A program made the position numbers and the translations under genes. The notes under the pieces were generated by a model that saw only the letters and a list, made by a program, of their open reading frames with translations, ran no database searches and had not been told where the DNA came from. Below, piece by piece: positions 6,940 through 64,000 of a DNA stretch of 64,000 bases; the first letter of the stretch is position 1; each line of letters begins with the position of its first letter. The stretch spans positions 62,001-126,000 of the IMG/VR virus record IMGVR_UViG_3300030041_000009; one strand, 5' to 3'.

Positions 6940-7000
6940 TTATGTTATTGATAATTTATGTTATTGATAATTTATGTTATTGATAATTTATGTTATTGAT
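6940..7000. repeat. 16-bp tandem repeat ttatgttattgataat, about 3.8 copies, reiterating the 3' end/stop of the 6988..8346 gene
   Basis: Units at 6940, 6956, 6972 and a partial unit at 6988. Confidence 0.9.
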
Positions 7001-36049: not shown

Positions 36050-36309
36050 ATGTTAAATTTATTTGATATATTATCTAATTCATATTTTTCAATTTCTTTT
36101 TTAGATAATTTTCTTTTTATGTCCTTATATTCTAAAAAATGAATATCTCCATTTACTCCAATAACGTTATATGGATAATATGCATTTTTTACAATATCAA
36201 CAATTTTAAATATTTTACTAGTTCCTACATATATATTATTATGAACAATTATATAATCATCAATATTATATTCTTTTTCCTTATTTTCAAATCTTTTTAA
36301 GTATTTCAT
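36046..36309 (-). CDS. CTS-like/FNI-tagged small protein
   Basis: MKYLKRFE..KFNI. Confidence 0.6.
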   Translation of the reverse strand: MKYLKRFENKEKEYNIDDYIIVHNNIYVGTSKIFKIVDIVKNAYYPYNVIGVNGDIHFLEYKDIKRKLSKKEIEKYELDNISNKFNI

Positions 36310-39380: not shown

Positions 39381-39776
39381 ATGTTAAACAAATATTTAGA
39401 TTTTATAAATGAAAATTTTAATATAGCTGAAGGTTATGTAAGTCATCCAACTGTTATATACTGGAATGAAAATGTAAATGATGTATTAAATGATGAGTGG
39501 TTTGATATATCAGTTAGTAGATATGGTTATCCTATATATATTATTAAATTTAGAATTGGAAATGATAAAAATGATACTCATAATTATTATCAAGCAGTAC
39601 TTGAAAATAAAGGATCAAATGATATTTATTATATGGAAAATCCTGAACCTTTTATTGCTAAATTTAAAACAGAATTTTCAAAAAATTCGTTAGAATATAT
39701 AAATAATATGAAATATGATCCAAAAGCACTAGGTGATTTGAGTTCTATTAGAGCATCAGCAAAATTTAATTTATAA
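39381..39776 (+). CDS. CTS-like/FNL-tagged protein (probable start 39381)
   Basis: MLNKYLDFINE...KFNL. Confidence 0.6.
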   Translation: MLNKYLDFINENFNIAEGYVSHPTVIYWNENVNDVLNDEWFDISVSRYGYPIYIIKFRIGNDKNDTHNYYQAVLENKGSNDIYYMENPEPFIAKFKTEFSKNSLEYINNMKYDPKALGDLSSIRASAKFNL

Positions 39777-43074: not shown

Positions 43075-43437
43075 TTATTCATCTTTATCTTCTAATATTC
43101 TTATTTTTAATTCCCTTAATAATTTATTCCAATATGGTTTAACGTCATCATAGTGTATATCTTTTATTATTTTATTAATATCATTTACTATATCATAAAA
43201 ATTATTAGAATATGTATTTCCAGCTATTGGATAAATAACTTCAATATTATTATCTCCTGTTTGTATCGGTAAATACAGTTCACGTATAGTATAATTTTCT
43301 TTTAATTCTTCATCTGATGATAAATTACCAGATTCAATATAACTCATTATCATCTCTTCTGCTTGCTGTCTTGTTAACCCTGATATATTTATTTTATATA
43401 CTATTATTATTAGTTCATTTTTCATTCGATATTTCAT
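43075..43437 (-). CDS. Hypothetical protein with RxxK[IL]-type tail
   Basis: Ends LLRELKIRILE. Confidence 0.55.
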   Translation of the reverse strand: MKYRMKNELIIIVYKINISGLTRQQAEEMIMSYIESGNLSSDEELKENYTIRELYLPIQTGDNNIEVIYPIAGNTYSNNFYDIVNDINKIIKDIHYDDVKPYWNKLLRELKIRILEDKDE

Positions 43438-43603
43438 TTAATTTTTCTAATTTATCTTTTCTTGTGACCGTATCAACAATTAAAATAGTTTGACCATCTC
43501 CAGTCGAAATCTTTTCTATTATAGATTTACAATCTTTTAATTCTCTATTTATATCATTAATTTTTTGCTTAGCATCATATCCTATATAAATTGCTTTTAA
43601 CAT
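43415..43603 (-). CDS. Small RKxKL-tagged protein, paralog of 43613
   Basis: RELK.CKSI..STG..LIVD..RKDKLEKLNE. Confidence 0.65.
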   Translation of the reverse strand: MLKAIYIGYDAKQKINDINRELKDCKSIIEKISTGDGQTILIVDTVTRKDKLEKLNEISNEK

Positions 43604-43612
43604 ATTTTTTAA

Positions 43613-43804
43613 TTATTTTTTATTTGATATTTCATTTAATTTTTCTAATTTTTCTTTTCTTGAAAAAATATCAACTATTAAAACTGTTCCATATCCAGTT
43701 GACATTTCTTTAATTATAGATTTGCATTCTTTTAACTCTCTATTTAATTCTTCCAGATCACTTTGTTTTCCATAATCTCCTCTTACAAATATTGCTTTTA
43801 TCAT
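43613..43804 (-). CDS. Small RKxKL-tagged protein
   Basis: RKEKLEKLNE. Confidence 0.65.
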   Translation of the reverse strand: MIKAIFVRGDYGKQSDLEELNRELKECKSIIKEMSTGYGTVLIVDIFSRKEKLEKLNEISNKK

Positions 43805-46310: not shown

Positions 46311-47057
46311 ATGAAAAATAAAGAAATATTATTTTTAGTAATTTCGATTTCAGTTATTATATTTTTAATCTATATAAATGTTAAACCATATACTAAATTA
46401 TATTCTAACATTTCTACATCAGATTACAATTTTAGTGAAATTGATAAATCATCTTCGTATAGTGATAAAAAACTTAATATTTTATCAAGTAGTACAGATA
46501 ATAATATTTCTGATGAAAGTGATGAACCTAACATCAGTATACCATCTGATGAATCATATAAGGTTATATCAGTAAATAATGATAATCCGTCATCATTGAG
46601 TTCTTCTGATTATAATGATGTATTATATTCTCATAATAATATGAATGATCATTCAGATATATTAATTCCATCATTTGATTTATATAATTCTAAAAAAGCA
46701 TCAAGTTCTAAATTAGATAATAATTTAACAGCAATAGCTACTACTACTGATTTGTCAAATAGTAGTTCATCAAATAGTAGTTTATCAAATAGTGGTAGTT
46801 CATCACAAAAATGTACTACTCCGCCAACTGGTTGTGGACATTGGGTACATCATGATGGATATTACGAATGGGAATATGATAAATGTGGTTGGCATGAAGT
46901 ATGGATTCCTCCTTATGATGAATGGGTATCTGAACCATGTCCTCCATCTTCTGTTCCAGTTGGTGATATACCTATATTAGAGTTATTTTCTCTTATATTT
47001 ATATATGTATTATATCTTAAACATAAAAAACTAAAACATTTAAAAGAATTATTATGA
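46311..47057 (+). CDS. Surface protein: N-terminal signal/anchor, Ser-rich linker, Cys/Trp domain, PID/PEP-CTERM-like C-terminal anchor
   Basis: VPVGD + TM helix + basic tail; HWVHHDGYYEW...WIPPYDEW. Confidence 0.55.
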   Translation: MKNKEILFLVISISVIIFLIYINVKPYTKLYSNISTSDYNFSEIDKSSSYSDKKLNILSSSTDNNISDESDEPNISIPSDESYKVISVNNDNPSSLSSSDYNDVLYSHNNMNDHSDILIPSFDLYNSKKASSSKLDNNLTAIATTTDLSNSSSSNSSLSNSGSSSQKCTTPPTGCGHWVHHDGYYEWEYDKCGWHEVWIPPYDEWVSEPCPPSSVPVGDIPILELFSLIFIYVLYLKHKKLKHLKELL

Positions 47058-48244
47058 AAAAACTATTATTATTTATTTTTTTGATGATTTCTTTTTCTAT
47101 ATTTTCAGAAAATGATAATCATAAATTTTCAATTGTAGGTGAAATTGGAGTAAATTATTTCGATGGTGATGTAACTCAAGATATCACAAGTATTTTTCCT
47201 GGATCAGTAAGACAAATAACAGTTGGAGGTCTTATTGAGTATACTCTCACTCCAATTTGGGGATTATCAGTTAATTATTATCATTTACCGTTAAAAGGTG
47301 AAAATCATTATGCATCATTTGAAACTAATTATAATACAGGTGATTTTAATGCCACTATTAATTTTACAAAAATGATTTTTCCAATGTCAAATTCTAAATT
47401 TTCTTTTAATGGATCAATTGGAATTGGTTATGCAAATTATACATTTAATCAAAATATCATAAAGCCTGATGTTACATCTAAAGCAATTCCTGATTATGGT
47501 AATGCATTCACTATTCCTATTACATTTTATGCTGAATATAGTTTATATAATAATATAAGTATAGGAGGAAAAATACATTATAGAACTAATAATAAAGATA
47601 ATTTAGAAGGTATAGTTTTAGCTTTTAGTACACCTGAAGGAGTAAAACATTATAGTAGTGGTGGATATGATAGCAATTCTAATGATAATATTGATGTATT
47701 TACACTCTATGCTCGTTATAAATTTAAATCAAAAGAATCTAAATCTATAGAAATTAATAAAAAATTAGAAAAGTATTCAGATTATGATAAACCTTGTTGT
47801 GGTACAACAGTTAATATAACTAATAATTATAATACAAATACAAATACTATTTATAATGGGTGTAAAACTTGTAATGATAGTACTACATATGCAAATAATA
47901 ATGGTATAAATGATGAATTTGTTAATAAAATTCCAAGTATTTATTTTGATTTCGATAAATATAATTTAGATAATACTGCATTAAATATTATTAAACATGT
48001 TGCGTTTATAATGAGAAAATATCCAGATTATAATGTTGAAATAAGAGGATATTGTGATTATATTGGTAATGTACCTTATAATGATAAATTAAGCATGAAT
48101 AGAGTTAATATGGTTAAAAATGAATTAGTAAATACATATAAAATTTCAGAGGATCATATTATCATAAATGGATTAGGTAAAATTGATACTCCAAAAATGA
48201 TGTATAGAATTAATAGACGTTGTGATTTCTTCTTCTTTAAATAA
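47054..48244 (+). CDS. OmpA-family outer membrane protein (beta-barrel + OmpA-C peptidoglycan-binding domain)
   Basis: Signal peptide; IYFDFDKY.L, I.GYCD..G...YN..LS..R, NRRCDF. Confidence 0.85.
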   Translation: MKKLLLFIFLMISFSIFSENDNHKFSIVGEIGVNYFDGDVTQDITSIFPGSVRQITVGGLIEYTLTPIWGLSVNYYHLPLKGENHYASFETNYNTGDFNATINFTKMIFPMSNSKFSFNGSIGIGYANYTFNQNIIKPDVTSKAIPDYGNAFTIPITFYAEYSLYNNISIGGKIHYRTNNKDNLEGIVLAFSTPEGVKHYSSGGYDSNSNDNIDVFTLYARYKFKSKESKSIEINKKLEKYSDYDKPCCGTTVNITNNYNTNTNTIYNGCKTCNDSTTYANNNGINDEFVNKIPSIYFDFDKYNLDNTALNIIKHVAFIMRKYPDYNVEIRGYCDYIGNVPYNDKLSMNRVNMVKNELVNTYKISEDHIIINGLGKIDTPKMMYRINRRCDFFFFK

Positions 48245-49074: not shown

Positions 49075-49521
49075 ATGAATATGTTAAATAAAATAATAAA
49101 AAATATTTTAAAAATATTTAAGAATTTTTATTACTTTTTATATACTCCTATGAAATTGTATGATACCTATCATGCATTAGATATTTTAGTTGTATATTTA
49201 GAAAATGTTAAAATTATTAATATTGAAATTATAATAGGTAATTGTGTAATAACTTTCTCTGATAATTCAGTATTAACTTTTTGGAATTCTAGATGGAATG
49301 CTTGGATGGCTTATGGAACAATGAAATTTAGTAATGGAAGAATAATGAAATGGAATAAAAAACAACCATCTTGTGAAGTTTATTATAAATATAAAAAATT
49401 AATTCTAAATCATGAAAAATCTAAAAATCATAAAATAGATAATGTAGAAATTGAAGATTTTTCTGATTGCTTACCTATTAAATTACTTAGAAAACAAAAA
49501 TTAAAAAATATTAAAAAATAA
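49075..49521 (+). CDS. RKxKL-tagged protein, intact paralog of the tnpB-split gene
   Basis: LDIL.VYLENVKI...RW..WM..G.M.F.NG..W...PS.EV.YKYKKLIL...CLPIKL.RK.KLKNIKK. Confidence 0.7.
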   Translation: MNMLNKIIKNILKIFKNFYYFLYTPMKLYDTYHALDILVVYLENVKIINIEIIIGNCVITFSDNSVLTFWNSRWNAWMAYGTMKFSNGRIMKWNKKQPSCEVYYKYKKLILNHEKSKNHKIDNVEIEDFSDCLPIKLLRKQKLKNIKK

Positions 49522-52837: not shown

Positions 52838-53143
52838 TCATATCAAATTTTTTAATTTTAATTTTCTAAATATTTTTATATGATATTCAATTATAAATTT
52901 TTTAAAATCTTCAAAATTAAAAAATTCTTTTGTATAGACTTTAATTTCATTTGTTATTTGGTAGTACCTATTAAATGAAATTATTTTATCCCAATCATTT
53001 ATTATATAAAAATTTATATTAATATAGCCATCTTGTTCAAATAGCATGAAATTATTTGTTTTATTTTTATAGCCTATAGATTCAATTAATTTTATGCATT
53101 TTTCATCATAATATTCTCTATATTTAAAATCAATCATATTCAA
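52838..53143 (-). CDS. Small RKxKL-tagged protein
   Basis: Ends FRKLKLKNLI. Confidence 0.55.
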   Translation of the reverse strand: MNMIDFKYREYYDEKCIKLIESIGYKNKTNNFMLFEQDGYININFYIINDWDKIISFNRYYQITNEIKVYTKEFFNFEDFKKFIIEYHIKIFRKLKLKNLI

Positions 53144-54317: not shown

Positions 54318-54857
54318 TTAAATATTGACATTTTTTAATGATATTAATTTTAATTTTCTTTGATCAATTCTAATTCTATCATTAAGATTTATGATAGTTT
54401 TTTCATAATCAATTCCTTCTTTTCTTCTGTAAAAAATTCCAGTTAGTTCATCTCGTCCTGATTTTTTATTTGTTAACTCTTTATAGAAAAAAATTTCTCT
54501 TGACTTAAAGAATTCTAATTTACGACAACCTTTTGTACTCATTATATCATCAACTACTAATTTACCATCAATATAAAATTTATTAATATTAAATTGAGTT
54601 GGACTAAATTCACTAGTAACATTATATTTTATCATAGCAGGACCATACAAATTATGAAGTTTACCATGATTTAAGTAGTACTCATAGTCATCAAATAATA
54701 TATGAGTAATATCCTTCAAATTGAATTCAATGTACTCATATAAAGAATAAAATGACTCAAAATCTTTTTTATATAATCTACCTGTTACGGAATCTATAGA
54801 TAAAAAAGAATCAAAATCAATCTTACATTCAACATCTAAAAATTTATACATTATCAT
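54318..54857 (-). CDS. Protein with LH..GPA motif and RKxKL tail
   Basis: GKLHNLYGPAMI; QRKLKLISL. Confidence 0.55.
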   Translation of the reverse strand: MIMYKFLDVECKIDFDSFLSIDSVTGRLYKKDFESFYSLYEYIEFNLKDITHILFDDYEYYLNHGKLHNLYGPAMIKYNVTSEFSPTQFNINKFYIDGKLVVDDIMSTKGCRKLEFFKSREIFFYKELTNKKSGRDELTGIFYRRKEGIDYEKTIINLNDRIRIDQRKLKLISLKNVNI

Positions 54858-55122
54858 TTAATAACTTATTTAATTTATATTTTCTTGCATCTTGATTATC
54901 TCCAAAATATTCATAAAAATAAAAATAAACACTATATTCATCATATTCATCATCTAATGAAAATGATATTTCACTAATTTTATCATTAAGTATAATTGTA
55001 ATAACACTATCATATATATGAGTTAATTTATAATATTTTCCTTTTTCTAATTCAGGAAAATTATTAAGAGTTGTATTTAATGTCTTTTTACAAAAATATA
55101 ATTCATTAATCTTAGGATGCAT
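54844..55122 (-). CDS. Distant member of the array family
   Basis: YFCKK...KGKYYK...FYEYFG...RKYKLNKL. Confidence 0.65.
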   Translation of the reverse strand: MHPKINELYFCKKTLNTTLNNFPELEKGKYYKLTHIYDSVITIILNDKISEISFSLDDEYDEYSVYFYFYEYFGDNQDARKYKLNKLLNDNV

Positions 55123-55366
55123 TTAATAACTTATTTAATTTTTCTTTTCTTTCTTCTTTAATAGTTCCAAAATATTCATAAAAATACAAATAACTCATAT
55201 GATTCTCTAATGAGAACACCATTTCACCAATATTAGAAATTATAACTACGTCACCATGATGACGATCTGAAACTTTATAATGTTTTCCTTTTTCAAAATA
55301 GTCATTATTAAATAAAAATTTCATTGCTTTCTTGCAATAATAATATTCATTAATCTTTGGACGCAT
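55112..55366 (-). CDS. Distant member of the array family
   Basis: YYCKK...KGKHYK...FYEYFG..ERKEKLNKL. Confidence 0.65.
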   Translation of the reverse strand: MRPKINEYYYCKKAMKFLFNNDYFEKGKHYKVSDRHHGDVVIISNIGEMVFSLENHMSYLYFYEYFGTIKEERKEKLNKLLNAS

Positions 55367-55723: not shown

Positions 55724-56008
55724 CTAACATTCTTTAATTATTTTTTCTAATTTATTTTTTCTAAATTCTTTTAAATCACAAAAATATGTATCAAAATCAT
55801 AATCTTCCATTCTTGGGGTGAACCAAAATGAATACCAACCATCACCATCACAACCATAACCATCATTAGTGTATTTTATTACAATAATATTATTATAATC
55901 TTTTTTCTCGTAAATAAAATATGAATAATTTTTTTTAAAAATCAATAGTTTATCAAACTCTCTGTAACAGTCCTTTATGCAAAAAACTTTATCGCCAACT
56001 TTATACAT
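55724..56008 (-). CDS. Distant member of the array family
   Basis: KVGDKVFCIKD...YF..KEFRKNKLEKI. Confidence 0.65.
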   Translation of the reverse strand: MYKVGDKVFCIKDCYREFDKLLIFKKNYSYFIYEKKDYNNIIVIKYTNDGYGCDGDGWYSFWFTPRMEDYDFDTYFCDLKEFRKNKLEKIIKEC

Positions 56009-56324
56009 TATTAATTATATTTTCTAATTTTTTCTTTCTTTTATTCTTAATCCAATCAGTTCTATTAAACTCAAATACAGATGGTATAATACTATGATCA
56101 TAATCAGTCATGATAATGTTACAATTTATTAAATCTAACCAACAATATGATATTCCTTTTTCTACATATCCATAAAATCCAGATATATATTTATTTGGTA
56201 TCTTAGGTATTTCAGATTCTGCTATTATTCTAAATTCATTTATTTTATTTGTAGGCTCAATATCTAAATTGAAACTAAAATAAATAAATTTACAATCATA
56301 AAACCATTCTTCTATCTCTTTCAT
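56001..56324 (-). CDS. Small RKxKL-tagged protein
   Basis: Ends KRKKKLENII. Confidence 0.55.
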   Translation of the reverse strand: MKEIEEWFYDCKFIYFSFNLDIEPTNKINEFRIIAESEIPKIPNKYISGFYGYVEKGISYCWLDLINCNIIMTDYDHSIIPSVFEFNRTDWIKNKRKKKLENIINNV

Positions 56325-56373: not shown

Positions 56374-58008
56374 TTATGTTTTTAAAACTTTTATAGAATC
56401 TGTAAAGTGCTTAGGTAATATATTAGAATTATATTTTAATAAATCTGAAAAGTTTGAGTCTAATATAAACGTATCGCAGTAATCTGTTTCACTACGAATT
56501 CCTCTACCTACTTCTTGTATTGTTTGAACACATGCATTCCAGCTATACCATTCAGGCATCATTTTTTGTCTTGCTTTAATTTTTTTACTACCCAAATTTG
56601 CGAATGATATTTTTAACACTATTTGAAAACGAGCTAATTCATCATCTAAAGAAATTCCTTCCATCATAGATGGACTTACTAAAACTGTTGGAGCTGTACT
56701 TGTTAAATGTTTTTCAAGAATTTCATTTCTATCTTCAGTAGTGTGAAATAATAACCTTTCATCCATAATATTTTCTTTTAACCATTCTGTTATTTCATAA
56801 TTTGATGTGTGAATTATTCCTTTTTTGTTTTTATATTTAGCTAATATTTTTTTTATCCAAGGTATCTGATTCTTAAAAGTCTCTTCTTTACTATAAAAAG
56901 ACATTTTACCAAGTTTCATATAAAATATAGGATGATTTTTTAATTCAAAAGGAGAATCCATTTCATGATAACTTGTTAATTCTTCATCTAATCCATTAAT
57001 GAAACTAAACATTTTAGAATCGAGTACAGAAGCAGACATAAAAATTATATGATCGTATTTAGACCATACATATTGATTTAGGTACTCATAAACGAAAATA
57101 TGTTCAGTTACCAACTCTATCCCACTATAATTTTTTTCACTCTTATTTTTATTGATATCAAGAACTACATTATCTGGATCATTTTTATGTGAATCAAATA
57201 AATGTTTAAACGATAATAGTTTACTATCAATATTTTGTAAATATTTAGATAACTCTACTTTTTGTTTTGATTTTGATGATCCAGCAATATCAGATTCAAA
57301 TTGAGTTCTTTTTTTCTCTAACATTGGTATTAACTTTCTTTCTAAAAATTCTAAATATTTATCTAAAAATTTAATTTTTGAAATATATTTGCTATCAATC
57401 TCTTCAATTTCTTTTAATCCAAATCCACATCTTTTTAAAGTTTTTGAACTTAATTTTGAGGAAAGATAGGATGAGAAGGTTTCTTCGAATGATTGACACT
57501 CATCAATTATAAGTACATTACCATCTCTTCTTTTTAAAATATCAGGTTGAAATAATGATAATGTATCAAATAGATGAAAATTACTCAAACCTATATCTCC
57601 AGATATCCAGGAATTTTTAGCAATGTCATATGGACATTGATCACAATGTTTTTTCATTATAGCACAGAGTTCTTTAGCTGTACCGCAATCACAATCAAAA
57701 TCTTTACAATAATAGTTAGATTTGCCTCTATAATCATTTATGAACGGAAAATCTCTGATATACTGGCCTTGAAGTACCTTCGATGCTGTAAGAATATCAA
57801 ATTTGGCATCTGGATTCACGAATCCTTTATACCAATTGGCTAGCATTATGACCATGAATGACTTACCAACCCCAGTCGGCAAATTTTCTAAAATAAAACG
57901 TTTACCTGTCAATATACTATTTTTAATAAAATTTAGTCCATCAATTTGGTAAGATTTTGGTTCGTATTTGAGAGGAAAAAATATTTTTTTGTCGTCTATT
58001 TGAATCAT
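56374..58008 (-). CDS. dinG: DinG/XPD-family helicase with Fe-S cysteines
   Basis: PTGVGKS, NYYC..C..C..CPY, IIDECQ, SAS, EGISL, Q.VGRGIRS.TD. Confidence 0.85.
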   Translation of the reverse strand: MIQIDDKKIFFPLKYEPKSYQIDGLNFIKNSILTGKRFILENLPTGVGKSFMVIMLANWYKGFVNPDAKFDILTASKVLQGQYIRDFPFINDYRGKSNYYCKDFDCDCGTAKELCAIMKKHCDQCPYDIAKNSWISGDIGLSNFHLFDTLSLFQPDILKRRDGNVLIIDECQSFEETFSSYLSSKLSSKTLKRCGFGLKEIEEIDSKYISKIKFLDKYLEFLERKLIPMLEKKRTQFESDIAGSSKSKQKVELSKYLQNIDSKLLSFKHLFDSHKNDPDNVVLDINKNKSEKNYSGIELVTEHIFVYEYLNQYVWSKYDHIIFMSASVLDSKMFSFINGLDEELTSYHEMDSPFELKNHPIFYMKLGKMSFYSKEETFKNQIPWIKKILAKYKNKKGIIHTSNYEITEWLKENIMDERLLFHTTEDRNEILEKHLTSTAPTVLVSPSMMEGISLDDELARFQIVLKISFANLGSKKIKARQKMMPEWYSWNACVQTIQEVGRGIRSETDYCDTFILDSNFSDLLKYNSNILPKHFTDSIKVLKT

Positions 58009-58045: not shown

Positions 58046-58946
58046 TTATTGTTTATTCCAATTCATATAATCATAAATCTTATCTTTCCAATTATTTCTA
58101 ATCATTGATTTATAAGCGCCAGAACTATTTAATAATTTTTTATTATTTATTTTTATTGTTTCATTCAAACAATTTTCATAATTCCAATAACCTTTAGGTT
58201 TTGTTTTATTTTCCATGTGTGAACATATATCATCAATCCAACCATTTTTTAATGCTGATCCAGCAGCACTTGCATATTTTAAGTAAAATTCACTTTTAGT
58301 TTTGCATTGTAATGCAACTTCTTGACATTTTTCTTTTGTCCATATTAAAGTAATTCCTCCTAAACTTCCTGTTTTCGCTGTATTTAAAATAATCCAACCA
58401 TTTTTTTTTATATATTTCTAAATGTGTTTCTTCCATAATTTTTGCATCACTAATATTTAAATAATCTGTTAATTGAATAAGTGTTGGATTTAATTTAAAT
58501 TCTTTAAAATATTTATATACAATACTATTATTATATTCATTGAAATGTCTACTATTTCTATTTTTTAAATTATATGTCAAGCCAACATATACATTCTTAT
58601 CACTAAATTCATAAGAATATATACATCTTAAAAAATCGTTAGGTTGTATCATATGAGAACAAATTTCATCTATCCAGTTATTTTTTATAGAAACGTTATG
58701 AGCAGCATAATATTTTTCACCAAATTCTTTTCTATTTTTACATTTTAATGCTAGTTCTAAACATATTTCTTTTGTCCAATAATCTTCATGATGTTTTAAT
58801 TTAATCATATGTGAACAAATATCGTCTAACCATTTATTTTTTGCAGATGCGAAATACGCAGAGCCAGAATTTAAACTAAAGCTACCTCTTGTATTATATT
58901 TCAAAGCTTCTTCTTTACATTTTTCATAAGTCCATTTTAATTTCAT
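58046..58946 (-). pseudogene. GIY-YIG homing endonuclease with WTKEKC repeats, frameshifted at an A9 tract
   Basis: CIYSY..VYVGLT; removing one A at 58401-58409 gives YKKNGWIILNTAKTGSLGG and further repeats to a stop at 58046. Confidence 0.8.
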
Positions 58947-59125
58947 AGTATAATATGTTTATTTTTTAGTTCATCTTTAAATTTTAGATCTTTACAGAGT
59001 TCTTCTATTATGCTATATTCTAAAAATTTTGATTTATTTGTAAAATTATCATCTATTTGTTTAATAATATTAACGTCTAGTGATATAGATATCGACAATT
59101 TTCTATTTTTCTTTGGTGATTTCAT
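58943..59125 (-). CDS. Ribbon-helix-helix-like protein
   Basis: KLSISISLD...NKSKFLE. Confidence 0.6.
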   Translation of the reverse strand: MKSPKKNRKLSISISLDVNIIKQIDDNFTNKSKFLEYSIIEELCKDLKFKDELKNKHIIL

Positions 59126-59259: not shown

Positions 59260-59418
59260 ATGCGGAAAAAGATACCTGATGATCAAAAAAGGAAGAAGAT
59301 TTCATTTTCGATAGATCCAAGGGTTTATGATATGTTTGTTAGATATTGTGAGCAGAATGAGATTGAGAATTATTCTGGATATATTGAGAAGATAATAATT
59401 GAAAAATTAAAAATTTAA
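59260..59418 (+). CDS. 52-aa ribbon-helix-helix-like protein (not in ORF track)
   Basis: MRKKIPDDQKRKKISFSIDPRVYDMF...NYSGYIEKII. Confidence 0.65.
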   Translation: MRKKIPDDQKRKKISFSIDPRVYDMFVRYCEQNEIENYSGYIEKIIIEKLKI

Positions 59419-59729
59419 TGAAGGATATTAAGACTATTAAAAGATCTAAAAAGAAGGTTATTCCAGTGAATGAAAGGACTTATATTGGATTTGATGTTAT
59501 AGAATTTAAGAGTGGTGGTAAATGTTACAGATTAAAATATGAATAGATGAAAGAAAAATTTAAAAAATACATATAATACGGAATAAAATGATTATATTTG
59601 ATATTGAATGGAAAATTGAATACAGTTGGAGTCAGAGTTTCTAATTTCGGTGAAAAACAATGAAATTAGTTTAGAATTACTTTACATTAGCAACAGTTCA
59701 TGATAGAAAAATAAAATTAGAACCACTTT

Positions 59730-59996
59730 ATGGATAAACAGAATATTAATATTGGAGATAAATTATTATGCAAAAATAGTTATTATAATTATACTGAAGT
59801 TTTTTATAAAGATAGAGAATATGAAATAGTTAATACTAACATATTTTATAGTAGTAATTTTTATTCATTAAAAGAAAAAAATAGCAAAAATTTATTATAT
59901 CTACGTAAAGTTGATTTTTATGATGTTTTTTATACTAAACAAGAAGAAAGAAAAATAAAATTAAACAAATTAAAAAATGACGAAAAAGAATATTAA
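59730..59996 (+). CDS. Array paralog 1
   Basis: QN.N.GDKLLCK ... FYTKQEERKIKL. Confidence 0.8.
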   Translation: MDKQNINIGDKLLCKNSYYNYTEVFYKDREYEIVNTNIFYSSNFYSLKEKNSKNLLYLRKVDFYDVFYTKQEERKIKLNKLKNDEKEY

Positions 59997-60300
59997 TTTA
60001 GGAGATAAGTTATTATGTAAAAAAGATTTATTTCAAAATTTAATTAGTGATGATAAATTAATAATATTTTCTCATTTTATAAAAGATAAATATTATTCTA
60101 TTGTTGATATAAAAATAATAGATGATAAATATGCTTATAAGAATACATGTGATCATATATTTGGACAAGATGATTATATTTATTATATAAATGGAGAAAT
60201 GAATAAATCATGTTCATTTTGGTCTGAAAGTTTTTTTCATGATTATTTTTATGAAAAAAAAGAATTAAGAAATAAGAAATTGCAGAAAATAAATGGATAA
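59977..60300 (+). CDS. Array paralog 2
   Basis: Same terminal motifs. Confidence 0.8.
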   Translation: MTKKNINLGDKLLCKKDLFQNLISDDKLIIFSHFIKDKYYSIVDIKIIDDKYAYKNTCDHIFGQDDYIYYINGEMNKSCSFWSESFFHDYFYEKKELRNKKLQKING

Positions 60301-60586
60301 ACAGAATCTTAATATTGGAGATAAATTATTATGCAAAAATGATTTAAAATCATTGGTATCTAATAATACTTCATTATTATTTTTTAAAAAAGGTAAATAT
60401 TATGTTGTTGATGAAATTAGATTAATTAATGATATTTTTGTGGATTATAATGAATATTTTTATTATATAATTGATGATAATAATGAACGATATTCATTTT
60501 GGATGGAAAGATATTTATATACTTATTTTTATACTAAAAATGAAATTAGAAGCATGAAATTAAATGAAATAAATGAAGGATCATAA
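60293..60586 (+). CDS. Array paralog 3
   Basis: Same terminal motifs. Confidence 0.8.
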   Translation: MDKQNLNIGDKLLCKNDLKSLVSNNTSLLFFKKGKYYVVDEIRLINDIFVDYNEYFYYIIDDNNERYSFWMERYLYTYFYTKNEIRSMKLNEINEGS

Positions 60587-60842
60587 TTTTAAAGTAGGAG
60601 ATAAATTATTATGCAAAAAAGATTATATTCATCATAAGATATCTATTCATAAAGGGAACGAATATATTATAAGTGATAGTTTATTTGAGACTGAATATTA
60701 TACTTTTATTTATATAATTGATGATAATAATGTAAAGGTAGAAGTTCAGTATGAAAAAGATATTTATGAATTTTTTTACACTGAGAAGGAAGTTAGGAAT
60801 ATTAAATTAAAAAAGTTGGGTAATGAAGGAACAGAATCTTAA
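60573..60842 (+). CDS. Array paralog 4
   Basis: Same terminal motifs. Confidence 0.8.
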   Translation: MKDHNFKVGDKLLCKKDYIHHKISIHKGNEYIISDSLFETEYYTFIYIIDDNNVKVEVQYEKDIYEFFYTEKEVRNIKLKKLGNEGTES

Positions 60843-61110
60843 TATAGGAGATGAATTAATATGTAAACGTATATTTCATCCAAATTTTGAATATTATATA
60901 CTAAATTCATGTTATACTGTTTATGATATTAAATTTTTTAATATTGATAATAAATTTTTTAATATTGATAATGCATATTATTATATGACCATAGGAAATG
61001 AAAAAATGAATATTGTTTGTTCATATGAAGATATTTATACTTATTTTTACACAAAAAACGAAACTAGAAAAATTAAATTACAAAAACTTCATGAAGAATC
61101 AAAATTTTAA
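60823..61110 (+). CDS. Array paralog 5
   Basis: Same terminal motifs. Confidence 0.8.
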   Translation: MKEQNLNIGDELICKRIFHPNFEYYILNSCYTVYDIKFFNIDNKFFNIDNAYYYMTIGNEKMNIVCSYEDIYTYFYTKNETRKIKLQKLHEESKF

Positions 61111-61375
61111 TATAGGAGATAAATTATTGTGTAAAATTGATGTTAATAAATCATATCTGACATTAACGAAAGGTGTAGAATATATAATTTTGAGTGCTGA
61201 CTTTGATGTACTTTTGAGTGCTGACATTGATGTACTTTATTATAAATATAATATAATAGATGATACCAATAAAGATTTCTATTATATAGAAGAATTTGAT
61301 GATTATTTTTATACTAAAAATGAAGTACGAAAAATTAAATTAGAAAAATTAAAAAATGAAGAAGCAGAATATTAA
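61091..61375 (+). CDS. Array paralog 6 (probable start 61091, MKNQNFNIG)
   Basis: Same terminal motifs. Confidence 0.8.
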   Translation: MKNQNFNIGDKLLCKIDVNKSYLTLTKGVEYIILSADFDVLLSADIDVLYYKYNIIDDTNKDFYYIEEFDDYFYTKNEVRKIKLEKLKNEEAEY

Positions 61376-61625
61376 TATTGGAGATAAGTTATTATGTAAG
61401 ATTAGTTTTTTATCAAATTCTACATATATTATAAAAGGTAAATATTATTATATTAAATATATTGATATTATTAATGTAGCTCGTAAAGATTATTATTTCT
61501 ATTATTTAGACGATTTCGAATCATTGGTATGTTGTGATGAAAAAGAATTTTGTAAATATTTTTATACTAAACAAGAAGAAAGAAAAATTAAATTAGAAAA
61601 ACTTTATGAAGAAGCAGAATATTAA
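61356..61625 (+). CDS. Array paralog 7
   Basis: Same terminal motifs. Confidence 0.8.
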   Translation: MKKQNINIGDKLLCKISFLSNSTYIIKGKYYYIKYIDIINVARKDYYFYYLDDFESLVCCDEKEFCKYFYTKQEERKIKLEKLYEEAEY

Positions 61626-61881
61626 TGTAGGAGATAAATTATTATGCAAAAAAAATCTTTTTAATTCAGAAAGTACATATCTTATTGAATTTGAATATTA
61701 TTATGTTTGTGAAATTACTCCAACTAATAATAATTATACTGATTATATTTATATGCTTATATGTGAACAATATCAACCTGTTAATTTTAGATATTACGGA
61801 GAATTTTGTGAATATTTTTATACTAAACAAGAAGAAAGAAAAATCAAATTAGAAAAACTTTATGAAGAATCAAAATCTTAA
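61606..61881 (+). CDS. Array paralog 8
   Basis: Same terminal motifs. Confidence 0.8.
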   Translation: MKKQNINVGDKLLCKKNLFNSESTYLIEFEYYYVCEITPTNNNYTDYIYMLICEQYQPVNFRYYGEFCEYFYTKQEERKIKLEKLYEESKS

Positions 61882-62137
61882 AGTAGGAGATAATTTATTA
61901 TGTAAATATAATATAATTAATATAAATAAAAATTTCAAAATAGACAAATATTATGCTATGATATCAATTTATATTATTTCTAATACTATAAGCGGTGTGG
62001 ATTTTTATTATTATTATTTATTTGATGATGATGATAATTTAATATTATTTTGTGGTGAAGAAGATTTATATGAATATTTTTATACTAAACAAGAAGAAAG
62101 AAAAAGAAAATTAGATAAAATAGAAAATTATGAATAA
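61862..62137 (+). CDS. Array paralog 9
   Basis: Same terminal motifs. Confidence 0.8.
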   Translation: MKNQNLKVGDNLLCKYNIININKNFKIDKYYAMISIYIISNTISGVDFYYYYLFDDDDNLILFCGEEDLYEYFYTKQEERKRKLDKIENYE

Positions 62138-62396
62138 TTTTAATGATGGTGATAAAATATTATGTAAAAAGGATTTAACTTATTATGGTAACCATATTAT
62201 AGAAGGTGATTATTATATTTTTCATGATAATATGTTTAGTGGTATTTTTAATGATTTTTACTGCTGTTATATAAGTGAATCTAATAATATATTTTCATAT
62301 TATTTAACTGAACATGATTTAGTTGGTCATTTTTTTATGAAAAATGAGATTAGAAAATTAAAATTAGAAAAACTTTATGAAGAAACAGAATATTAA
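62130..62396 (+). CDS. Array paralog 10
   Basis: Same motifs; MNNFN subtype. Confidence 0.8.
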   Translation: MNNFNDGDKILCKKDLTYYGNHIIEGDYYIFHDNMFSGIFNDFYCCYISESNNIFSYYLTEHDLVGHFFMKNEIRKLKLEKLYEETEY

Positions 62397-62628
62397 TGTA
62401 GGAGATAGATTATTATGTAAAGAGGAGATTGATAAAATATTTATTAAAGATAAATATTATTATGTAGATGATATTAAAAATTTTTCAACTGATTATAGTG
62501 AATATTTTTATGATTTAAGATCAGAATTCAATACAATATTACCATTTTTTAGTGAATCATATTTACATCAGTATTTTTATACTAAACAAGAAGAAAGAAA
62601 AATCAAATTAGAAAAACTTTATGAATAA
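62377..62628 (+). CDS. Array paralog 11
   Basis: Same terminal motifs. Confidence 0.8.
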   Translation: MKKQNINVGDRLLCKEEIDKIFIKDKYYYVDDIKNFSTDYSEYFYDLRSEFNTILPFFSESYLHQYFYTKQEERKIKLEKLYE

Positions 62629-62887
62629 TTTTAATGAAGGTGATAAAATATTATGTAAAAAAGATTTAATAGCTAATTATAGTACACATTTTATAGAATG
62701 TAAATATTATATTTATCATAAAATTCTGAATGATTCATTTAAAGGTTTTGCCTGCTGTATATTTAATGAATCTAATGGAATATATCCATATTTTTTAAAT
62801 AAAAATGAATTACTAAATCATTTTTATACTAAACAAGAAGAGAGAAAAATTAAATTAGAAAAACTTTATGAAGAATCAGAATCTTAA
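62621..62887 (+). CDS. Array paralog 12
   Basis: Same motifs; MNNFN subtype, core similar to paralog 10. Confidence 0.8.
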   Translation: MNNFNEGDKILCKKDLIANYSTHFIECKYYIYHKILNDSFKGFACCIFNESNGIYPYFLNKNELLNHFYTKQEERKIKLEKLYEESES

Positions 62888-63140
62888 TGTAGGTGATAAG
62901 TTATTGTGTAAAAAAAATTTAAATGAATTATATGCAAGTTTTAATAAAAATAAATATTATATTGTTTATGATATTAAATTATTTGACAATAATACTGATT
63001 ATTGTTATTATATAGAATTTGATAAAAAAAAATATTATTCTTTTAGATATAGCGTTAGATTTTTTTATGAACATTTTTATACTAAACAAGAGGAGAGAAA
63101 AATAAAATTAGAAAAACTTTATGAAGAAACAGGATATTAA
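62868..63140 (+). CDS. Array paralog 13
   Basis: Same terminal motifs. Confidence 0.8.
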   Translation: MKNQNLNVGDKLLCKKNLNELYASFNKNKYYIVYDIKLFDNNTDYCYYIEFDKKKYYSFRYSVRFFYEHFYTKQEERKIKLEKLYEETGY

Positions 63141-63387
63141 TGATGAAGATAAATTATTATGTAAAAAAAATCTTCTAGTTGGAGCAAATAAATATTTATA
63201 TGTTGATAATTATTATATTGTTATGGTAGTATACGGTCCTTATGAATATTGTTATTATTTTAATGATGAAAATGATAGAATATTACCATTTTCATTTAGC
63301 ATAAAAGAGATGTCTGAACATTTTTATACTAAACAAGAAGAAAGAAAAATTAAATTAGAAAAAATTTATGAAGAATCAGAATCTTAA
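63121..63387 (+). CDS. Array paralog 14
   Basis: Same terminal motifs. Confidence 0.8.
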   Translation: MKKQDINDEDKLLCKKNLLVGANKYLYVDNYYIVMVVYGPYEYCYYFNDENDRILPFSFSIKEMSEHFYTKQEERKIKLEKIYEESES

Positions 63388-63631
63388 TGTAGGAGATAAG
63401 TTATTATGTAAAAAAGATTTAACAACATCATATTCAATATATCATAAAGATAGATATTATATTGTTCATTTTATTATTAATTATGATGATGATTATCAGT
63501 ATTTGATATCTGATGATAAAAATGCTTATTCATCTTTTAAACGTGATGAAGAATATTTATATACTTATTTTTATAGAAAAAATGAGATTAGAAAAATTAA
63601 ATTGAAAAAATTGAATAATATTTTTAATTAA
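63368..63631 (+). CDS. Array paralog 15
   Basis: Same terminal motifs. Confidence 0.8.
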   Translation: MKNQNLNVGDKLLCKKDLTTSYSIYHKDRYYIVHFIINYDDDYQYLISDDKNAYSSFKRDEEYLYTYFYRKNEIRKIKLKKLNNIFN

Positions 63632-63696: not shown

Positions 63697-64000
63697 ATGA
63701 AAAAAGTAAAGAACATTTTATTTAAAATGGAATTAGAAGGTAATGGTGTTGTTAACTGTGATAGTAATGGACAAAAATGGATATGGAATGAAATTAGTGG
63801 TGGAAAGTATGAAACTGATAATAATTTAATATTTGCAAAAAAAAATATATATCAGAAAAGTAATGGTGAATATGATTATAAAATAAAAATTTCTAGTAAT
63901 TGTTTAAGACATAATATTTTTATTGATGATATTCCATTTCAATCTCCAAATATATTGCATAATAATTATTTACTTGTGTCAATGTTGGCTTCTCCTGCAA
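63697..64000 (+). CDS. Putative Cas7/RAMP-like protein, truncated at window edge (not in ORF track)
   Basis: MKKVKNILFKMELEGNGVVNCDS...NNLIFAKK...KIKISSNCLRHNIF resembles the Cas7 (DevR/Cst2) N-terminal pattern N...KK...iS..alR. Confidence 0.55.
   Translation, partial: MKKVKNILFKMELEGNGVVNCDSNGQKWIWNEISGGKYETDNNLIFAKKNIYQKSNGEYDYKIKISSNCLRHNIFIDDIPFQSPNILHNNYLLVSMLASPA

What the first reader, a model, noticed from the sequence alone, without database searches (positions are those of the whole stretch)
59730..63631. Protein-coding repeat-spacer array: 15 coupled genes with constant ends and hypervariable cores
Seen: 15 consecutive 83-107-aa ORFs, each overlapping the next by 8-20 bp. A ~90-bp junction encodes both the upstream C-terminus (FYTKQEERKIKLEKLYEE) and the downstream N-terminus (MKxQNLNVGDKLLCKK). 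Many junctions are nearly identical at DNA level (e.g. near 61560, 61815, 62820, 63070, 63320), while the ~50-60-aa cores mostly share little beyond a KxKYYxV strand and extreme Tyr/Phe richness. Inference: a small beta-barrel (SH3/KOW-like) scaffold with a diversified aromatic surface, i.e. a repertoire of binders such as anti-defence or host-takeover proteins. Homogenised junctions would let recombination (UvsW/UvsY are in this window) add, delete or swap whole cassettes while keeping frame and translational coupling, like an integron or gene accordion with no integrase.
Basis: partly seen in the sequence, partly recalled or inferred. Interest (0 to 1): 0.9.

Follow-up and report, generated by a model that had tools for sequence, protein, structure and literature searches.

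The report
Tandem SH3-like gene array beside phage CRISPR-Cas
A 346-kb peat phage carries 15 overlapping copies of a small, fast-diverging beta-barrel protein gene directly upstream of its own CRISPR-Cas system; the array is real and is reshaped by recombination at its conserved gene junctions, but what the proteins do is still unknown.

Summary
Fifteen intact paralogous ORFs of 83-107 aa fill window 59730-63631. They overlap by 8-20 nt, and each sits one frame ahead of the one before.

AlphaFold models of two cassettes give an SH3/Tudor-like barrel plus C-terminal helices. The family has no Pfam, PHROG or NCBIfam match, yet it has about 1,300 metagenomic relatives.

- The array lies directly upstream of a phage CRISPR-Cas (Cas7fv, Cas5fv-like, Cas6, 37 repeats, Cas3).
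- Sister lineages keep the array but carry a different Cas type.
- A decayed 16th copy lies at 59547-59729, and three more members lie on the minus strand.
- The constant C-terminal block (RKxKLxxL) also ends at least nine unrelated small proteins in the window.

Recombination at junctions is supported:
- Junctions cluster by genome (34/57 against 13.8 expected); cores do not.
- One relative has a 133-nt exact junction repeat that builds mosaic cassettes.
- Another differs by a clean two-cassette indel.

The array is nevertheless identical in nine assemblies, and the constant ends are mainly a protein signature. The binder or anti-defence function is untested. I read it as a birth-and-death multigene family in a conflict island.

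The parts
59260..59418 (+). 52-aa ORF at the head of the operon. By eye it looks ribbon-helix-helix-like; this was not confirmed.
   Evidence: 90% and 80% identical in lineage D and in L024. Pfam gives only a sub-threshold Trans_coact hit.
59418..59546 (+). 42-aa ORF conserved directly upstream of the array in all lineages
   Evidence: About 74% identity over its C-terminal 27-34 residues in L001, L007, L013 and L024
59547..59729 (+). Decayed remnant (several stops) of a 'leader' cassette subfamily. Its C-terminal tail ...HDRKIKLEPL is kept right before the ATG of cassette 1.
   Evidence: tblastn of the intact L013 leader cassette: 49% over 57 aa, E 5e-12. The subfamily is intact in lineages B, C and D.
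59730..59996 (+). cassette W01, 88 aa
59977..60300 (+). cassette W02, 107 aa, with a loop insertion. Ortholog of L013 cassette C04 (core about 80% identical).
60293..60586 (+). cassette W03, 97 aa
60573..60842 (+). cassette W04, 89 aa
60823..61110 (+). cassette W05, 95 aa, with an in-frame 21-nt tandem repeat at 60924-60986
61091..61375 (+). cassette W06, 94 aa from the family-type ATG, with an in-frame 24-nt tandem repeat at 61188-61238
61356..61625 (+). cassette W07, 89 aa
61606..61881 (+). cassette W08, 91 aa
61862..62137 (+). cassette W09, 91 aa
62130..62396 (+). cassette W10, 88 aa (MNNFN subtype, recent paralog of W12)
62377..62628 (+). cassette W11, 83 aa. Ortholog of L001 cassette D13.
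62621..62887 (+). cassette W12, 88 aa. Ortholog of C15 and B12.
62868..63140 (+). cassette W13, 90 aa (modelled)
63121..63387 (+). cassette W14, 88 aa
63368..63631 (+). cassette W15, 87 aa, the last one. It keeps the tail although the next gene starts 66 nt later.
63698..64000 (+). 5' part of cas7fv, cut by the window end. First gene of a type I-Fv-like CRISPR-Cas module.
   Evidence: L006 is 99.99% identical to the window and extends it. Pfam Cas7fv-like and NCBIfam cas_Cas7fv, E 2e-19, below that model's cut-off. CRISPR array.
54844..55122 (-). family member outside the array, 92 aa
   Evidence: hmmsearch with the family profile, E 8e-12
55112..55366 (-). family member outside the array, 84 aa
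   Evidence: E 1e-11
55724..56008 (-). family member outside the array, 94 aa
   Evidence: E 1e-10
56374..58008 (-). 544-aa helicase. Synteny anchor on the left of the variable island.
   Evidence: Helicase_C_2. 75-90% identical in all lineages.
58296..58946 (-). GIY-YIG-like ORF (weak match). It is replaced by a DUF723 protein, or absent, in other lineages.
58943..59125 (-). 60-aa ORF transcribed divergently from the array operon. Ribbon-helix-helix-like by eye only.

Best explanation
SHOWN. The region is a tandem multigene family of at least 15 translated small genes. Each is predicted to fold as a six-stranded SH3/Tudor-like barrel followed by two helices. The N-terminal strand (GDKLLCKK), a central YY strand and the C-terminal FYxKxExRKxKLxxL helix are conserved. 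The exposed core residues differ almost completely between copies.

The family evolves by birth and death. Most cassette types predate the split of four sister phage lineages. Only 4-7 orthologs per genome pair can still be recognised. Copy number runs from 13 to 18, or 15 to 19 if the divergent leader copies are counted, and pseudogenes occur. Recent paralogs diverge fastest in the core.

Homologous recombination centred on the conserved gene junctions (the tail of gene n plus the head of gene n+1) homogenises blocks of junctions. It also makes mosaic cassettes and adds or removes whole cassettes in frame.

Genes overlap by 8-20 nt in a +1 frame rotation, with no Shine-Dalgarno sequence. The A-rich, unstructured codons of the tail lie just upstream of the next gene's start.

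INFERRED. The A-rich tail codons double as the leader of the next gene. The array is probably one polycistronic unit, possibly continuing into the cas genes. The proteins are a set of binders on one scaffold. They probably act in phage-host or phage-phage conflict, because they sit in the most variable island of the genome beside a swappable CRISPR-Cas module. The shared C-terminal basic helix would be a common handle, and the variable barrel surface would give specificity.
For: ORFs and overlaps. Family profile and size: (1,307 representative clusters at E<=1e-3). Fold. Conserved hydrophobic pattern with variable exposed positions. Synteny helicase - array - Cas in four lineages with two Cas types. 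Junction nearest neighbour in the same genome in 34 of 57 cases against 13.8 +/- 3.6 under label shuffling; cores 11 of 63 against 15.2. A 133-nt exact junction repeat and mosaic cassettes D13/D15/D16 in L001. A clean 506-bp two-cassette indel between L001 and L002 with its breakpoint inside identical junctions. An alternative right flank starting in the tail of cassette C16 (L032). Pseudogene remnant and truncated B06. Orthologs and turnover. dN/dS in ortholog cores 0.3-1.25, in ends 0.1-0.6, in recent paralog cores 0.8-2.2. No SD (1 of 89 genes) and A-rich leaders. Junction RNA less structured than shuffles. No internal terminators.
Against: There is no expression or protein evidence: no RNA run was listed and the read-laying run failed. 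The array is identical in eight IMG/VR contigs and differs at one base in the ENA contig, so turnover is slow on the sampled scale. The L002 deletion could be a short-read assembly collapse across a junction repeat that is identical over the roughly 70 nt compared. Averaged over all cassettes, the ends are barely more similar within genomes than between them, and synonymous identity is no higher in ends than in cores. No structural match is significant and no homolog has a known function, so the binder or conflict role rests on context only. More distant phages hold even larger arrays with no Cas homolog on the same contig (L054), so the Cas adjacency may be inherited synteny. NG86 dN/dS is unreliable at 18% G+C.
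Confidence: 0.55

Rival explanations
1. The cassettes form an anti-CRISPR library, or a CRISPR-linked accessory set. They inhibit the Cascade complexes of rival phages or of the host, and are kept and co-expressed next to the phage's own CRISPR-Cas.
For: The array is directly upstream of, and co-oriented with, the cas genes in all four lineages although the Cas type differs. Cascade subunits diverge far faster than their neighbours between lineages W and B: Cas7fv 54%, Cas5fv-like 41% and Cas3 44%, against Cas6 86% and helicase 88%. That is what an inhibitor arms race would produce. The related lineages are recovered from peat metagenome assemblies of the same series. The cassettes are small proteins, and a small possibly regulatory ORF heads the operon.
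Against: There is no sequence or structural similarity to any solved anti-CRISPR among the top Foldseek PDB hits. Large arrays occur in other phages with no Cas homolog on the contig. Family members also lie elsewhere in the genome. No spacer of one lineage was found to target the held parts of another.
Confidence: 0.1
2. The conserved C-terminal RKxKLxxL helix is an address tag, for example for packaging into the virion for injection, recruitment to a hub protein, or timed degradation. The array is one class of tagged cargo among many.
For: The tail sits within 12 residues of the C-terminus of 9 non-family proteins in the window, against 0.05 expected. 181 distinct ORFs in the held loci carry it. 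Profile comparison with four of these proteins matches only the tail. Synonymous codon variation shows selection on the amino acids. The tail is kept where no downstream gene follows closely (W15, 54318, 52838).
Against: The tail's first codon lies 25 or 28 nt before the next ATG in most cases, and its codons are more A-rich than background. Part of the constraint may therefore serve translation of the next gene. The pseudogene at 59547-59729 keeps only its tail. No partner, virion proteome or localisation data exist.
Confidence: 0.15
3. The cassettes are nucleic-acid-binding small barrels, like Tudor/KOW domains or the SH3 domain of Dda/RecD-type helicases. They modulate replication, transcription or translation. 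The many copies give dosage or sequence-preference variants rather than anti-defence binders.
For: ESM Atlas structure matches to the C-terminal SH3 region of UvrD_C_2/AAA_30 helicases, TM 0.58-0.66 over residues 3-90. BFVD hits include phage helicase C-termini. The ends are basic. A weak feature-level lead points to T4 MotB.
Against: All matches are below significance (E>0.03; feature scores <0.9). Cores are mostly acidic and aromatic. Some orthologous cores are kept under purifying selection while being different from each other, which argues against simple dosage.
Confidence: 0.13
4. The array is a dedicated cassette-exchange device, like an integron or a protein-coding analogue of a CRISPR array, with the junction acting as a specific recombination site.
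For: Co-oriented cassettes without evident own promoters, conserved junctions, and indel and flank breakpoints that fall in junctions.
Against: No integrase or recombinase is in the precomputed Pfam lists of the flanks. There is no hairpin: junctions fold worse than shuffles. Both ends are protein-level motifs kept in single-copy relatives. All cassettes are homologous to each other. General homologous recombination is sufficient, and UvsW is present.
Confidence: 0.03
5. The ORFs are not separate genes. Ribosomes shift +1 at each junction to make a beads-on-a-string polyprotein, or the region is non-functional repeat DNA.
For: Every junction advances the frame by +1. Some junctions read CTT TAT G, which resembles the CUU-U slippery site of prfB (recalled from general knowledge).
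Against: Each cassette has its own ATG and stop. The slippery-like codon is absent from many junctions. No stimulatory stop or SD is present. 63 cassettes in four lineages keep intact frames with only one truncation. Single-copy relatives exist.
Confidence: 0.02

Closest known systems
PeSL-mediated modular shuffling in hyperplastic regions of T4-type phages (Arbiol et al. 2010, PMC2839356; PMC4122927)
   Same: Short conserved sequences flank small non-essential ORFs in a variable region of a phage with T4-type recombination genes. Recombination between them causes insertions, deletions and replacements of whole genes.
   Different: PeSLs are non-coding intergenic promoter plus stem-loop terminator units. 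Here the recombining unit is coding (tail of one protein plus head of the next), overlaps two genes and is unstructured, and the cassettes are paralogs. No terminator-like sites were found.
Viral tandem multigene families and gene accordions (poxvirus K3L amplification, ASFV MGF360/505; recalled from general knowledge)
   Same: Tandem amplification followed by diversification of small host-interaction genes. Copy number differs between lineages, and there are pseudogenes and gene conversion.
   Different: No rapid expansion or contraction is seen in nine assemblies. The function here is unknown. The genes overlap with a fixed +1 frame rotation.
Integron cassette arrays
   Same: Ordered, co-oriented cassettes behind a leader, with a conserved element at each cassette boundary.
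   Different: No integrase, no attC hairpin, cassettes are homologous to each other, and the boundaries are protein-coding.
T4 internal proteins with a constant capsid-targeting sequence and variable bodies (recalled from general knowledge)
   Same: A constant terminal peptide is shared by otherwise different small proteins in a polymorphic locus of a T4-type phage. Some of those proteins are anti-restriction factors.
   Different: The tag here is C-terminal and helical. No cleavage site or packaging evidence exists, and about 30% of the ORFs in the window carry it.
Huge-phage CRISPR-Cas systems without adaptation genes (Al-Shayeb et al. 2020, PMC7162821)
   Same: This is a huge phage related to the Mahaphage clade (helicase 45% identical to LR756501). 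It carries a type I variant system lacking Cas1/Cas2 and a compact array.
   Different: That paper was searched only for four terms, none about such an array, so whether it describes one is unknown. The array is the subject here. Within this clade the Cas type is swapped in situ.
Anti-CRISPR operons with Aca regulators
   Same: Small proteins of unknown fold family, a small possibly DNA-binding ORF in the operon, and a location in a conflict island.
   Different: No homology to known Acr families. Fifteen paralogs of one fold is not typical. Activity is untested.

Membership tests
Tandem multigene family evolving by birth-and-death with gene conversion | Members are homologous and tandemly arranged | tested here: met
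   All 15 hit one profile and are aligned in A1
Tandem multigene family evolving by birth-and-death with gene conversion | Copy number and content differ between related genomes, with some shared orthologs | tested here: met
   13, 15, 17 and 18 profile-matching copies. Only 4-7 reciprocal best core hits per genome pair, while the flanking helicase is 75-90% identical.
Tandem multigene family evolving by birth-and-death with gene conversion | Pseudogenes or truncated members | tested here: met
   Remnant at 59547-59729; 50-aa truncated B06
Tandem multigene family evolving by birth-and-death with gene conversion | Conversion or unequal crossing-over tracts | tested here: met
   Junctions cluster by genome while cores do not. 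133-nt exact repeat and mosaics in L001. Two-cassette indel, with the caveat of possible assembly collapse.
SH3/Tudor-like small beta-barrel fold | Five to six strands forming a small barrel | tested here: inconclusive
   AF2 pLDDT 87 and 80 with six strands. The best Foldseek hits are SH3/Tudor, but at E 0.3-1 and TM 0.4-0.56.
CRISPR repeat-spacer array | Short (about 23-47 bp) non-coding direct repeats separating spacers of foreign origin | tested here: not met
   Period 244-316 bp, and every unit is an ORF. The genuine CRISPR array (36-nt repeat, 29-31-nt spacers) lies downstream in L006.
Integron | Tyrosine-recombinase integrase next to the array | tested here: not met
   No integrase family in the precomputed Pfam lists for 10 kb on either side in four lineages
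Integron | attC-like imperfect inverted repeat at each cassette end | tested here: not met
   Junctions fold less well than shuffles, z +0.4 to +1.7
PeSL regulatory cassette | Intergenic early promoter followed by a terminator stem-loop | tested here: not met
   No intergenic space. 0 terminator-like sites, and promoter-like sites at shuffle level.
Anti-CRISPR protein | Inhibits a CRISPR-Cas effector | not testable with these tools
   Needs an interference assay
Anti-CRISPR protein | Homology or structural similarity to a known Acr family | tested here: not met
   No Pfam, PHROG or NCBIfam hit. No Acr among the top PDB fold matches.
Diversity-generating retroelement target | Reverse transcriptase and a template repeat nearby | tested here: not met
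   No RT in the flanks. Differences between near-identical strains are not concentrated in the array.
Type I-Fv CRISPR-Cas (the neighbour, not the array) | Cas7fv, Cas5fv, Cas6f and Cas3, without Cas8 or a small subunit | tested here: inconclusive
   Cas7fv-like (Pfam; NCBIfam E 2e-19 but below its cut-off). The 299-aa protein has no family hit. Cas6 and Cas3 with HD are found. No Cas1/2 in the held 9 kb.

The most novel reading that the evidence does not exclude
The phage runs a tagged-effector system. About 30% of the ORFs in this window end in one C-terminal RKxKLxxL helix. That helix would act as an address label, for packaging and injection or for recruitment to a hub. The SH3-like array would be the diversified warhead set, possibly including inhibitors of rival phages' fast-evolving Cascade complexes. 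Because tail and head are coding and overlap, ordinary homologous recombination at junctions would work as a built-in, frame-preserving cassette shuffler, a coding counterpart of T4 PeSLs.
Probability: 0.12. Interest if true: 0.85.

Novelty: new variant of a known kind. Interest (0 to 1): 0.62.

Why it matters
Huge phages carry hundreds of small genes of unknown function, and this locus gives three ways into them.

- **An undescribed family.** It has about 1,300 representative clusters and no Pfam, PHROG or NCBIfam model. One scaffold is amplified to 15-27 tandem copies.
- **Evolution through coding junctions.** Cassettes are homogenised, deleted and recombined into mosaics at overlapping gene junctions. 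This extends the PeSL idea of modular shuffling to overlapping genes in a phage that uses no Shine-Dalgarno sequences.
- **A shared C-terminal tail.** It sits on many unrelated small proteins and can be tested directly as a tag.

The position next to a CRISPR-Cas module that is swapped between sister lineages marks a phage conflict island. Binders against host or rival-phage factors, including possible new anti-CRISPRs, could be looked for there.

Tried and rejected
- **Phage record searches.** Megablast of the region and tblastn of one cassette against 50,697 phage records found nothing.
- **Protein family libraries.** Pfam, PHROGs and NCBIfam on the cassettes gave nothing; Pfam and PHROGs on ten distant relatives gave nothing either.
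- **Solved structures.** The PDB sequence search gave only chance Ras hits.
- **Bacterial and archaeal genomes.** No relative was found. The first attempt failed for lack of a conserved stretch.
- **RNA families and signals.** Rfam gave nothing. The promoter scan was at shuffle level and uninformative at this A+T content.
- **Processing hairpin at junctions.** Rejected, because junctions are less structured than shuffles.
- **Expression data.** No RNA run was listed.
- **CRISPR spacers.** Spacers of three lineages were searched against all held loci and two against IMG/VR. Only the arrays themselves matched.
- **Hypermutation or a DGR.** Rejected, because strain-level SNPs are not concentrated in the array.
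- **Junction DNA identity beyond protein constraint.** Rejected as a general statement. It was kept for sub-blocks.
- **Tail as a purely RNA-level signal.** Rejected. The nucleotide motif is in frame 25 times against 2 out of frame, and it shows synonymous variation.
- **Tail or family in Mahaphage LR756501.** None was found in 50 kb.
- **Programmed +1 frameshifting into a polyprotein.** Considered and judged unlikely.

Full report
**Observation**

One search lists 15 consecutive + strand ORFs between 59730 and 63631, of 83-107 aa. The sixth is listed from an upstream TTG; the family-type ATG is at 61091. Neighbours overlap by 20, 8 or 14 nt, and every start-to-start distance is 1 mod 3, so each gene sits one frame ahead of the previous one.

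The repeat finder and TRF see the 244-316-bp periodicity. The protein alignment gives MKxQNxNxGDKLLCKK at the start, a central YY strand and YFYTKQEERKIKLEKL at the end. Amino-acid identity within the array is 70% in the first 16 residues, 22% in the core and 62% in the C-block.

The array is 18.3% G+C against 23.2% for the window. Tyr is 11.9% against 6.8% in other window proteins. At this composition roughly one random codon in ten is a stop, so 15 open frames in a row are not chance. The 'nearly identical' junctions are in fact 88-92% identical over about 103 nt, and the longest exact repeat is 54 nt.

1. *A CRISPR-Cas system follows the array.* The ORF starting at 63698 is the beginning of cas7fv. 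Locus L006 is 99.99% identical to the last 11.4 kb of the window and continues 8.9 kb further. It shows, in order:
   - Cas7fv-like protein;
   - a 299-aa protein in the Cas5fv position;
   - Cas6;
   - a CRISPR array of 37 copies of a 36-nt repeat with 29-31-nt spacers;
   - Cas3 with an HD domain.
   No Cas1 or Cas2 is present.
2. *A 16th, decayed cassette.* Window 59547-59729 is the remnant of a 'leader' cassette subfamily that is intact in sister lineages. tblastn gives 49% identity over 57 aa (E 5e-12), with several stops. Its last 20 codons, including ...HDRKIKLEPL, are still open right up to the ATG of cassette 1.
3. *Three more members on the minus strand.* They lie at 54844, 55112 and 55724, on the other side of a 544-aa helicase.

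**Source and relatives**

The window comes from a 346,561-bp contig of a peat metagenome. The helicase is 45% identical to that of the 735-kb Mahaphage LR756501, a clade predicted to infect Bacteroidetes (PMC7162821). Only 1 of 89 window ORFs has a Shine-Dalgarno-like sequence, and the 20 nt before starts are 50-70% A. That fits such a host.

Four sister lineages were recovered, here called W, B, C and D:

| Lineage | Loci | Cassettes matching the profile | Downstream Cas module |
|---|---|---|---|
| W | the window | 15 | type I-Fv-like |
| B | L007, L023 | 13, one truncated | type I-Fv-like, strongly diverged |
| C | L010-L013, L045 | 17 | Cas6, 551-aa protein, Cas7, Cas5d, Cas3 |
| D | L001 | 18 | as C, plus Cas4 and Cas1 |

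Lineages B, C and D also carry one or two divergent leader-type copies that the profile missed or only partly caught.

All four share the order helicase - 42/43-aa ORF - array - Cas module - a conserved roughly 650-aa gene. The helicase is 75-90% identical between lineages. Between W and B, Cas7fv is 54%, the Cas5fv-like protein 41% and Cas3 44% identical, while Cas6 is 86%. The array therefore sits inside the most variable island of these genomes, next to a Cas module that was exchanged in place.

**Family**

The cassettes have no Pfam, PHROG or NCBIfam match, and ten distant relatives have no Pfam or PHROG match. There is no hit in 50,697 phage records and none in bacterial or archaeal genomes.

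A profile search of 1.84 billion representative proteins finds 1,307 clusters at E<=1e-3, all about 80-110 aa. More distant A+T-rich phage contigs hold single copies, triplets or larger arrays. L054 has 27 copies on 14.6 kb and L058 has 10 on 5.2 kb. Neither shows a Cas homolog on the contig. The adjacency to CRISPR-Cas is thus a feature of this clade, not of the family.

**Structure**

AlphaFold2 with a 67-sequence alignment gives mean pLDDT 87 for W13. The model has six strands and then helices at 63-69 and 73-88. For the 107-aa W02 it gives pLDDT 80 with the same order of elements plus a low-confidence insertion at 49-65.

Foldseek against the PDB ranks SH3 and Tudor domains first, but none is significant (E 0.3-1). 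BFVD gives small uncharacterised phage proteins and the C-termini of UvrD-like helicases. The ESM Atlas gives TM 0.58-0.66 to the same helicase region.

Across 63 cassettes the alternating hydrophobic pattern of the core strands is conserved while the other positions vary freely. So the cores share a fold, and the variation is on exposed positions.

**How the array evolves**

- *The constant ends are mostly a protein signature.* Synonymous-codon identity at identical residues is about 0.8 in ends and cores alike. It is similar within and between genomes, which reflects extreme codon bias. Averaged over all pairs, the ends are hardly more alike within a genome than between genomes: N-block 0.665 against 0.652, C-block 0.567 against 0.535. 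Single-copy relatives keep both ends.
- *Junctions are nevertheless homogenised in blocks.* The nearest neighbour of a junction (tail of gene n plus head of gene n+1, about 103 nt) lies in the same genome in 34 of 57 cases, against 13.8 +/- 3.6 under label shuffling. None of 20,000 shuffles reached 34. For cores the figure is 11 of 63 against 15.2. The effect is concentrated in W07-W15 and D08-D17.
- *Mosaic cassettes.* L001 holds a 133-nt exact repeat that covers the tail of D12 plus the first 30 codons of D13, and again D14/D15. D15 combines the head of D13 with a D16-like body.
- *A whole-cassette indel.* L002, from another sample, differs from L001 by a clean 506-bp deletion of exactly two cassettes, with its breakpoint inside junctions that are identical over the roughly 70 nt compared. 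A third sample (L003) has the long form. This could be real unequal crossing-over or an assembly collapse.
- *An alternative right flank.* L032 is identical to lineage C up to the tail of cassette C16 and then continues into different DNA.
- *High turnover between lineages.* Only 4-7 reciprocal best core hits exist per genome pair, mostly collinear (for example W02-C04 at 81%, W11-D13 at 68%). 47 of 63 cassettes have their best core match in another genome. Most cassette types are therefore older than the lineages, and recent duplicates are few (W10/W12, D13/D14, D15/D16, C15/C16).
- *Selection.* NG86 estimates give dN/dS of 0.3-1.25 in ortholog cores, 0.1-0.6 in ends and 0.8-2.2 in the cores of recent paralogs. 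The method is crude at this base composition.
- *In-frame micro-duplications.* Two cassettes carry tandem repeats inside the core: 21 nt x 3 in W05 and 24 nt x 2 in W06.
- *No rapid change on the sampled scale.* The 4.5-kb region is 100% identical in eight IMG/VR contigs from different samples and differs at one base in an ENA contig. SNPs between near-identical strains of lineage C are not concentrated in the array.

**The C-terminal block is a shared tail**

The pattern R-[KNSHA]-x-K-[LIM]-x-x-[LI] within 12 residues of the C-terminus occurs in nine window proteins that do not match the family profile, plus the three minus-strand members. The nine range from 57 to 179 aa. Shuffling predicts 0.05.

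Profile-profile comparison of the family with four of them aligns only the 9-15 residues of the tail, or nothing. Related loci show the same: 9 of 44 ORFs in L025 and 11 of 39 in L027. In L054 and L058, other tail-bearing genes are interspersed with family members. Altogether 181 distinct tail-bearing ORFs are in the held loci.

Several observations bear on what constrains the tail:
- The codons vary synonymously: AGA 0.79 with CGT, AGG and CGA also used; TTA, TTG and CTT for Leu.
- The nucleotide pattern is in frame 25 times, out of frame twice and flagged intergenic three times. One of those three is the tail of W05, misclassified by the script, and one is the pseudogene tail at 59705. The constraint is therefore on the protein.
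- The first codon of the motif lies 25 or 28 nt before the next ATG in most cases.
- The tail codons are somewhat more A-rich than background.
- Junction RNA is less structured than shuffles.
- The pseudogene keeps only its tail.

The tail codons probably also serve as the A-rich leader of the next gene in a host without Shine-Dalgarno initiation. The tail is absent from 50 kb of Mahaphage LR756501.

**Function**

Nothing links the family to a known activity. My best reading has three parts.
- It is a repertoire of small binders on one scaffold, evolving by birth and death.
- It is probably expressed as one translationally coupled operon that may run on into the cas genes. No terminator-like site lies in the array.
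- It acts in phage-host or phage-phage conflict, because it lies in a hypervariable island with a swappable CRISPR-Cas module and polymorphic homing-endonuclease-like genes.

The evolutionary and structural description is well supported; the function is inference from context. The rivals are an anti-CRISPR library aimed at rival Cascades, a tagged-cargo system defined by the tail, nucleic-acid-binding modulators, a dedicated integron-like device, and a frameshifted polyprotein. Each is scored in its own section.

**Comparison with known systems**

The closest known mechanism is PeSL-mediated modular shuffling in T4-type phages (PMC2839356; PMC4122927). There, short conserved units flanking small ORFs recombine to insert, delete and replace genes. 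Here the unit is coding, overlapping and unstructured instead of an intergenic promoter-terminator.

The array resembles viral multigene families and gene accordions in outcome, but it shows no rapid copy-number change. It is not a CRISPR array, not an integron and not a DGR target, because defining features of each were tested and not met. The neighbouring Cas module fits the huge-phage systems without adaptation genes described in PMC7162821.

**Verdict**

This is a real and unusual locus: a new, large, uncharacterised phage protein family in a new variant of a known evolutionary pattern. It has two added points of interest, the position next to a phage CRISPR-Cas system and the clade-wide C-terminal tail. 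The fold and junction recombination are supported. The binder or anti-defence role remains open.

Noticed in passing
window 63698-64000 and L006:11077-18674: Phage-encoded type I-Fv-like CRISPR-Cas: Cas7fv-like, a 299-aa protein with no family hit in the Cas5fv position, Cas6, 37 copies of a 36-nt repeat with 29-31-nt spacers, and Cas3 with an HD domain. No Cas1/Cas2 in the held sequence.
   Followed up: partly
L007:10898-17224, L013:10855-17298, L001:11878-19526: Sister phage lineages with 75-90% identical flanking helicases carry different Cas modules in the same slot. Some have I-Fv-like; others have Cas6, a 551-aa protein, Cas7, Cas5d and Cas3, and L001 adds Cas4 and Cas1. Between the two I-Fv lineages the Cascade subunits and Cas3 are only 41-54% identical while Cas6 is 86%.
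   Followed up: partly
L007:13762-13792 and L013:18575-18607: Two lineages with different CRISPR-Cas types and different repeats carry nearly the same spacer (29 nt with one mismatch), which suggests a common target. No protospacer was found by exact search in IMG/VR.
   Followed up: partly
window 25322-25884, 43415-43804, 49075-49521, 52838-53137, 54318-54857, 56001-56324: Nine small proteins unrelated to the array family end in the same RKxKLxxL tail within 12 residues of the C-terminus (0.05 expected by shuffling). The same is seen in related loci, giving 181 distinct tail-bearing ORFs in all.
   Followed up: yes
window 19015-19287, 27537-27854, 35367-35714, 35711-36049, 36046-36309, 39381-39776; L060:16411-17802: A second multi-copy small-protein family. 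Five of the six window copies start MKY[IL]KxFE, and all end in KFN[LI]. It is scattered through the window and also present in a more distant phage contig.
   Followed up: no
window 60924-60986 and 61188-61238: In-frame tandem micro-duplications inside two cassette cores (21 nt x 3 in W05, 24 nt x 2 in W06). This is a further way the cores lengthen and diverge.
   Followed up: no
window 58296-58946 (-); L001:4880-6148; L003:1730-2410; L007:3513-4811: The gene between helicase and array is polymorphic. It is a GIY-YIG-like ORF here (weak Pfam match) and a DUF723 protein of 422-432 aa, or a 226-aa version, in other lineages and samples. It is absent in lineage C. It may be a mobile endonuclease next to the recombining array.
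   Followed up: no
L032:1697-1991: A short contig is identical to lineage C up to the tail of cassette C16. It then continues into an unrelated ORF instead of the last cassette and Cas6. This is either a strain with another right flank or a chimeric assembly.
   Followed up: partly
whole window: Shine-Dalgarno-like sequences precede only 1 of 89 ORFs, and the 20 nt before starts are 50-70% A. This fits SD-independent initiation as in Bacteroidota, and the Mahaphage-like helicase.
   Followed up: partly
window 444-6902, 6988-8346, 47054-48244: A 2,152-aa ORF, a 452-aa protein with a collagen triple-helix repeat, and a 396-aa protein with an OmpA-family domain lie elsewhere in the window.
   Followed up: no
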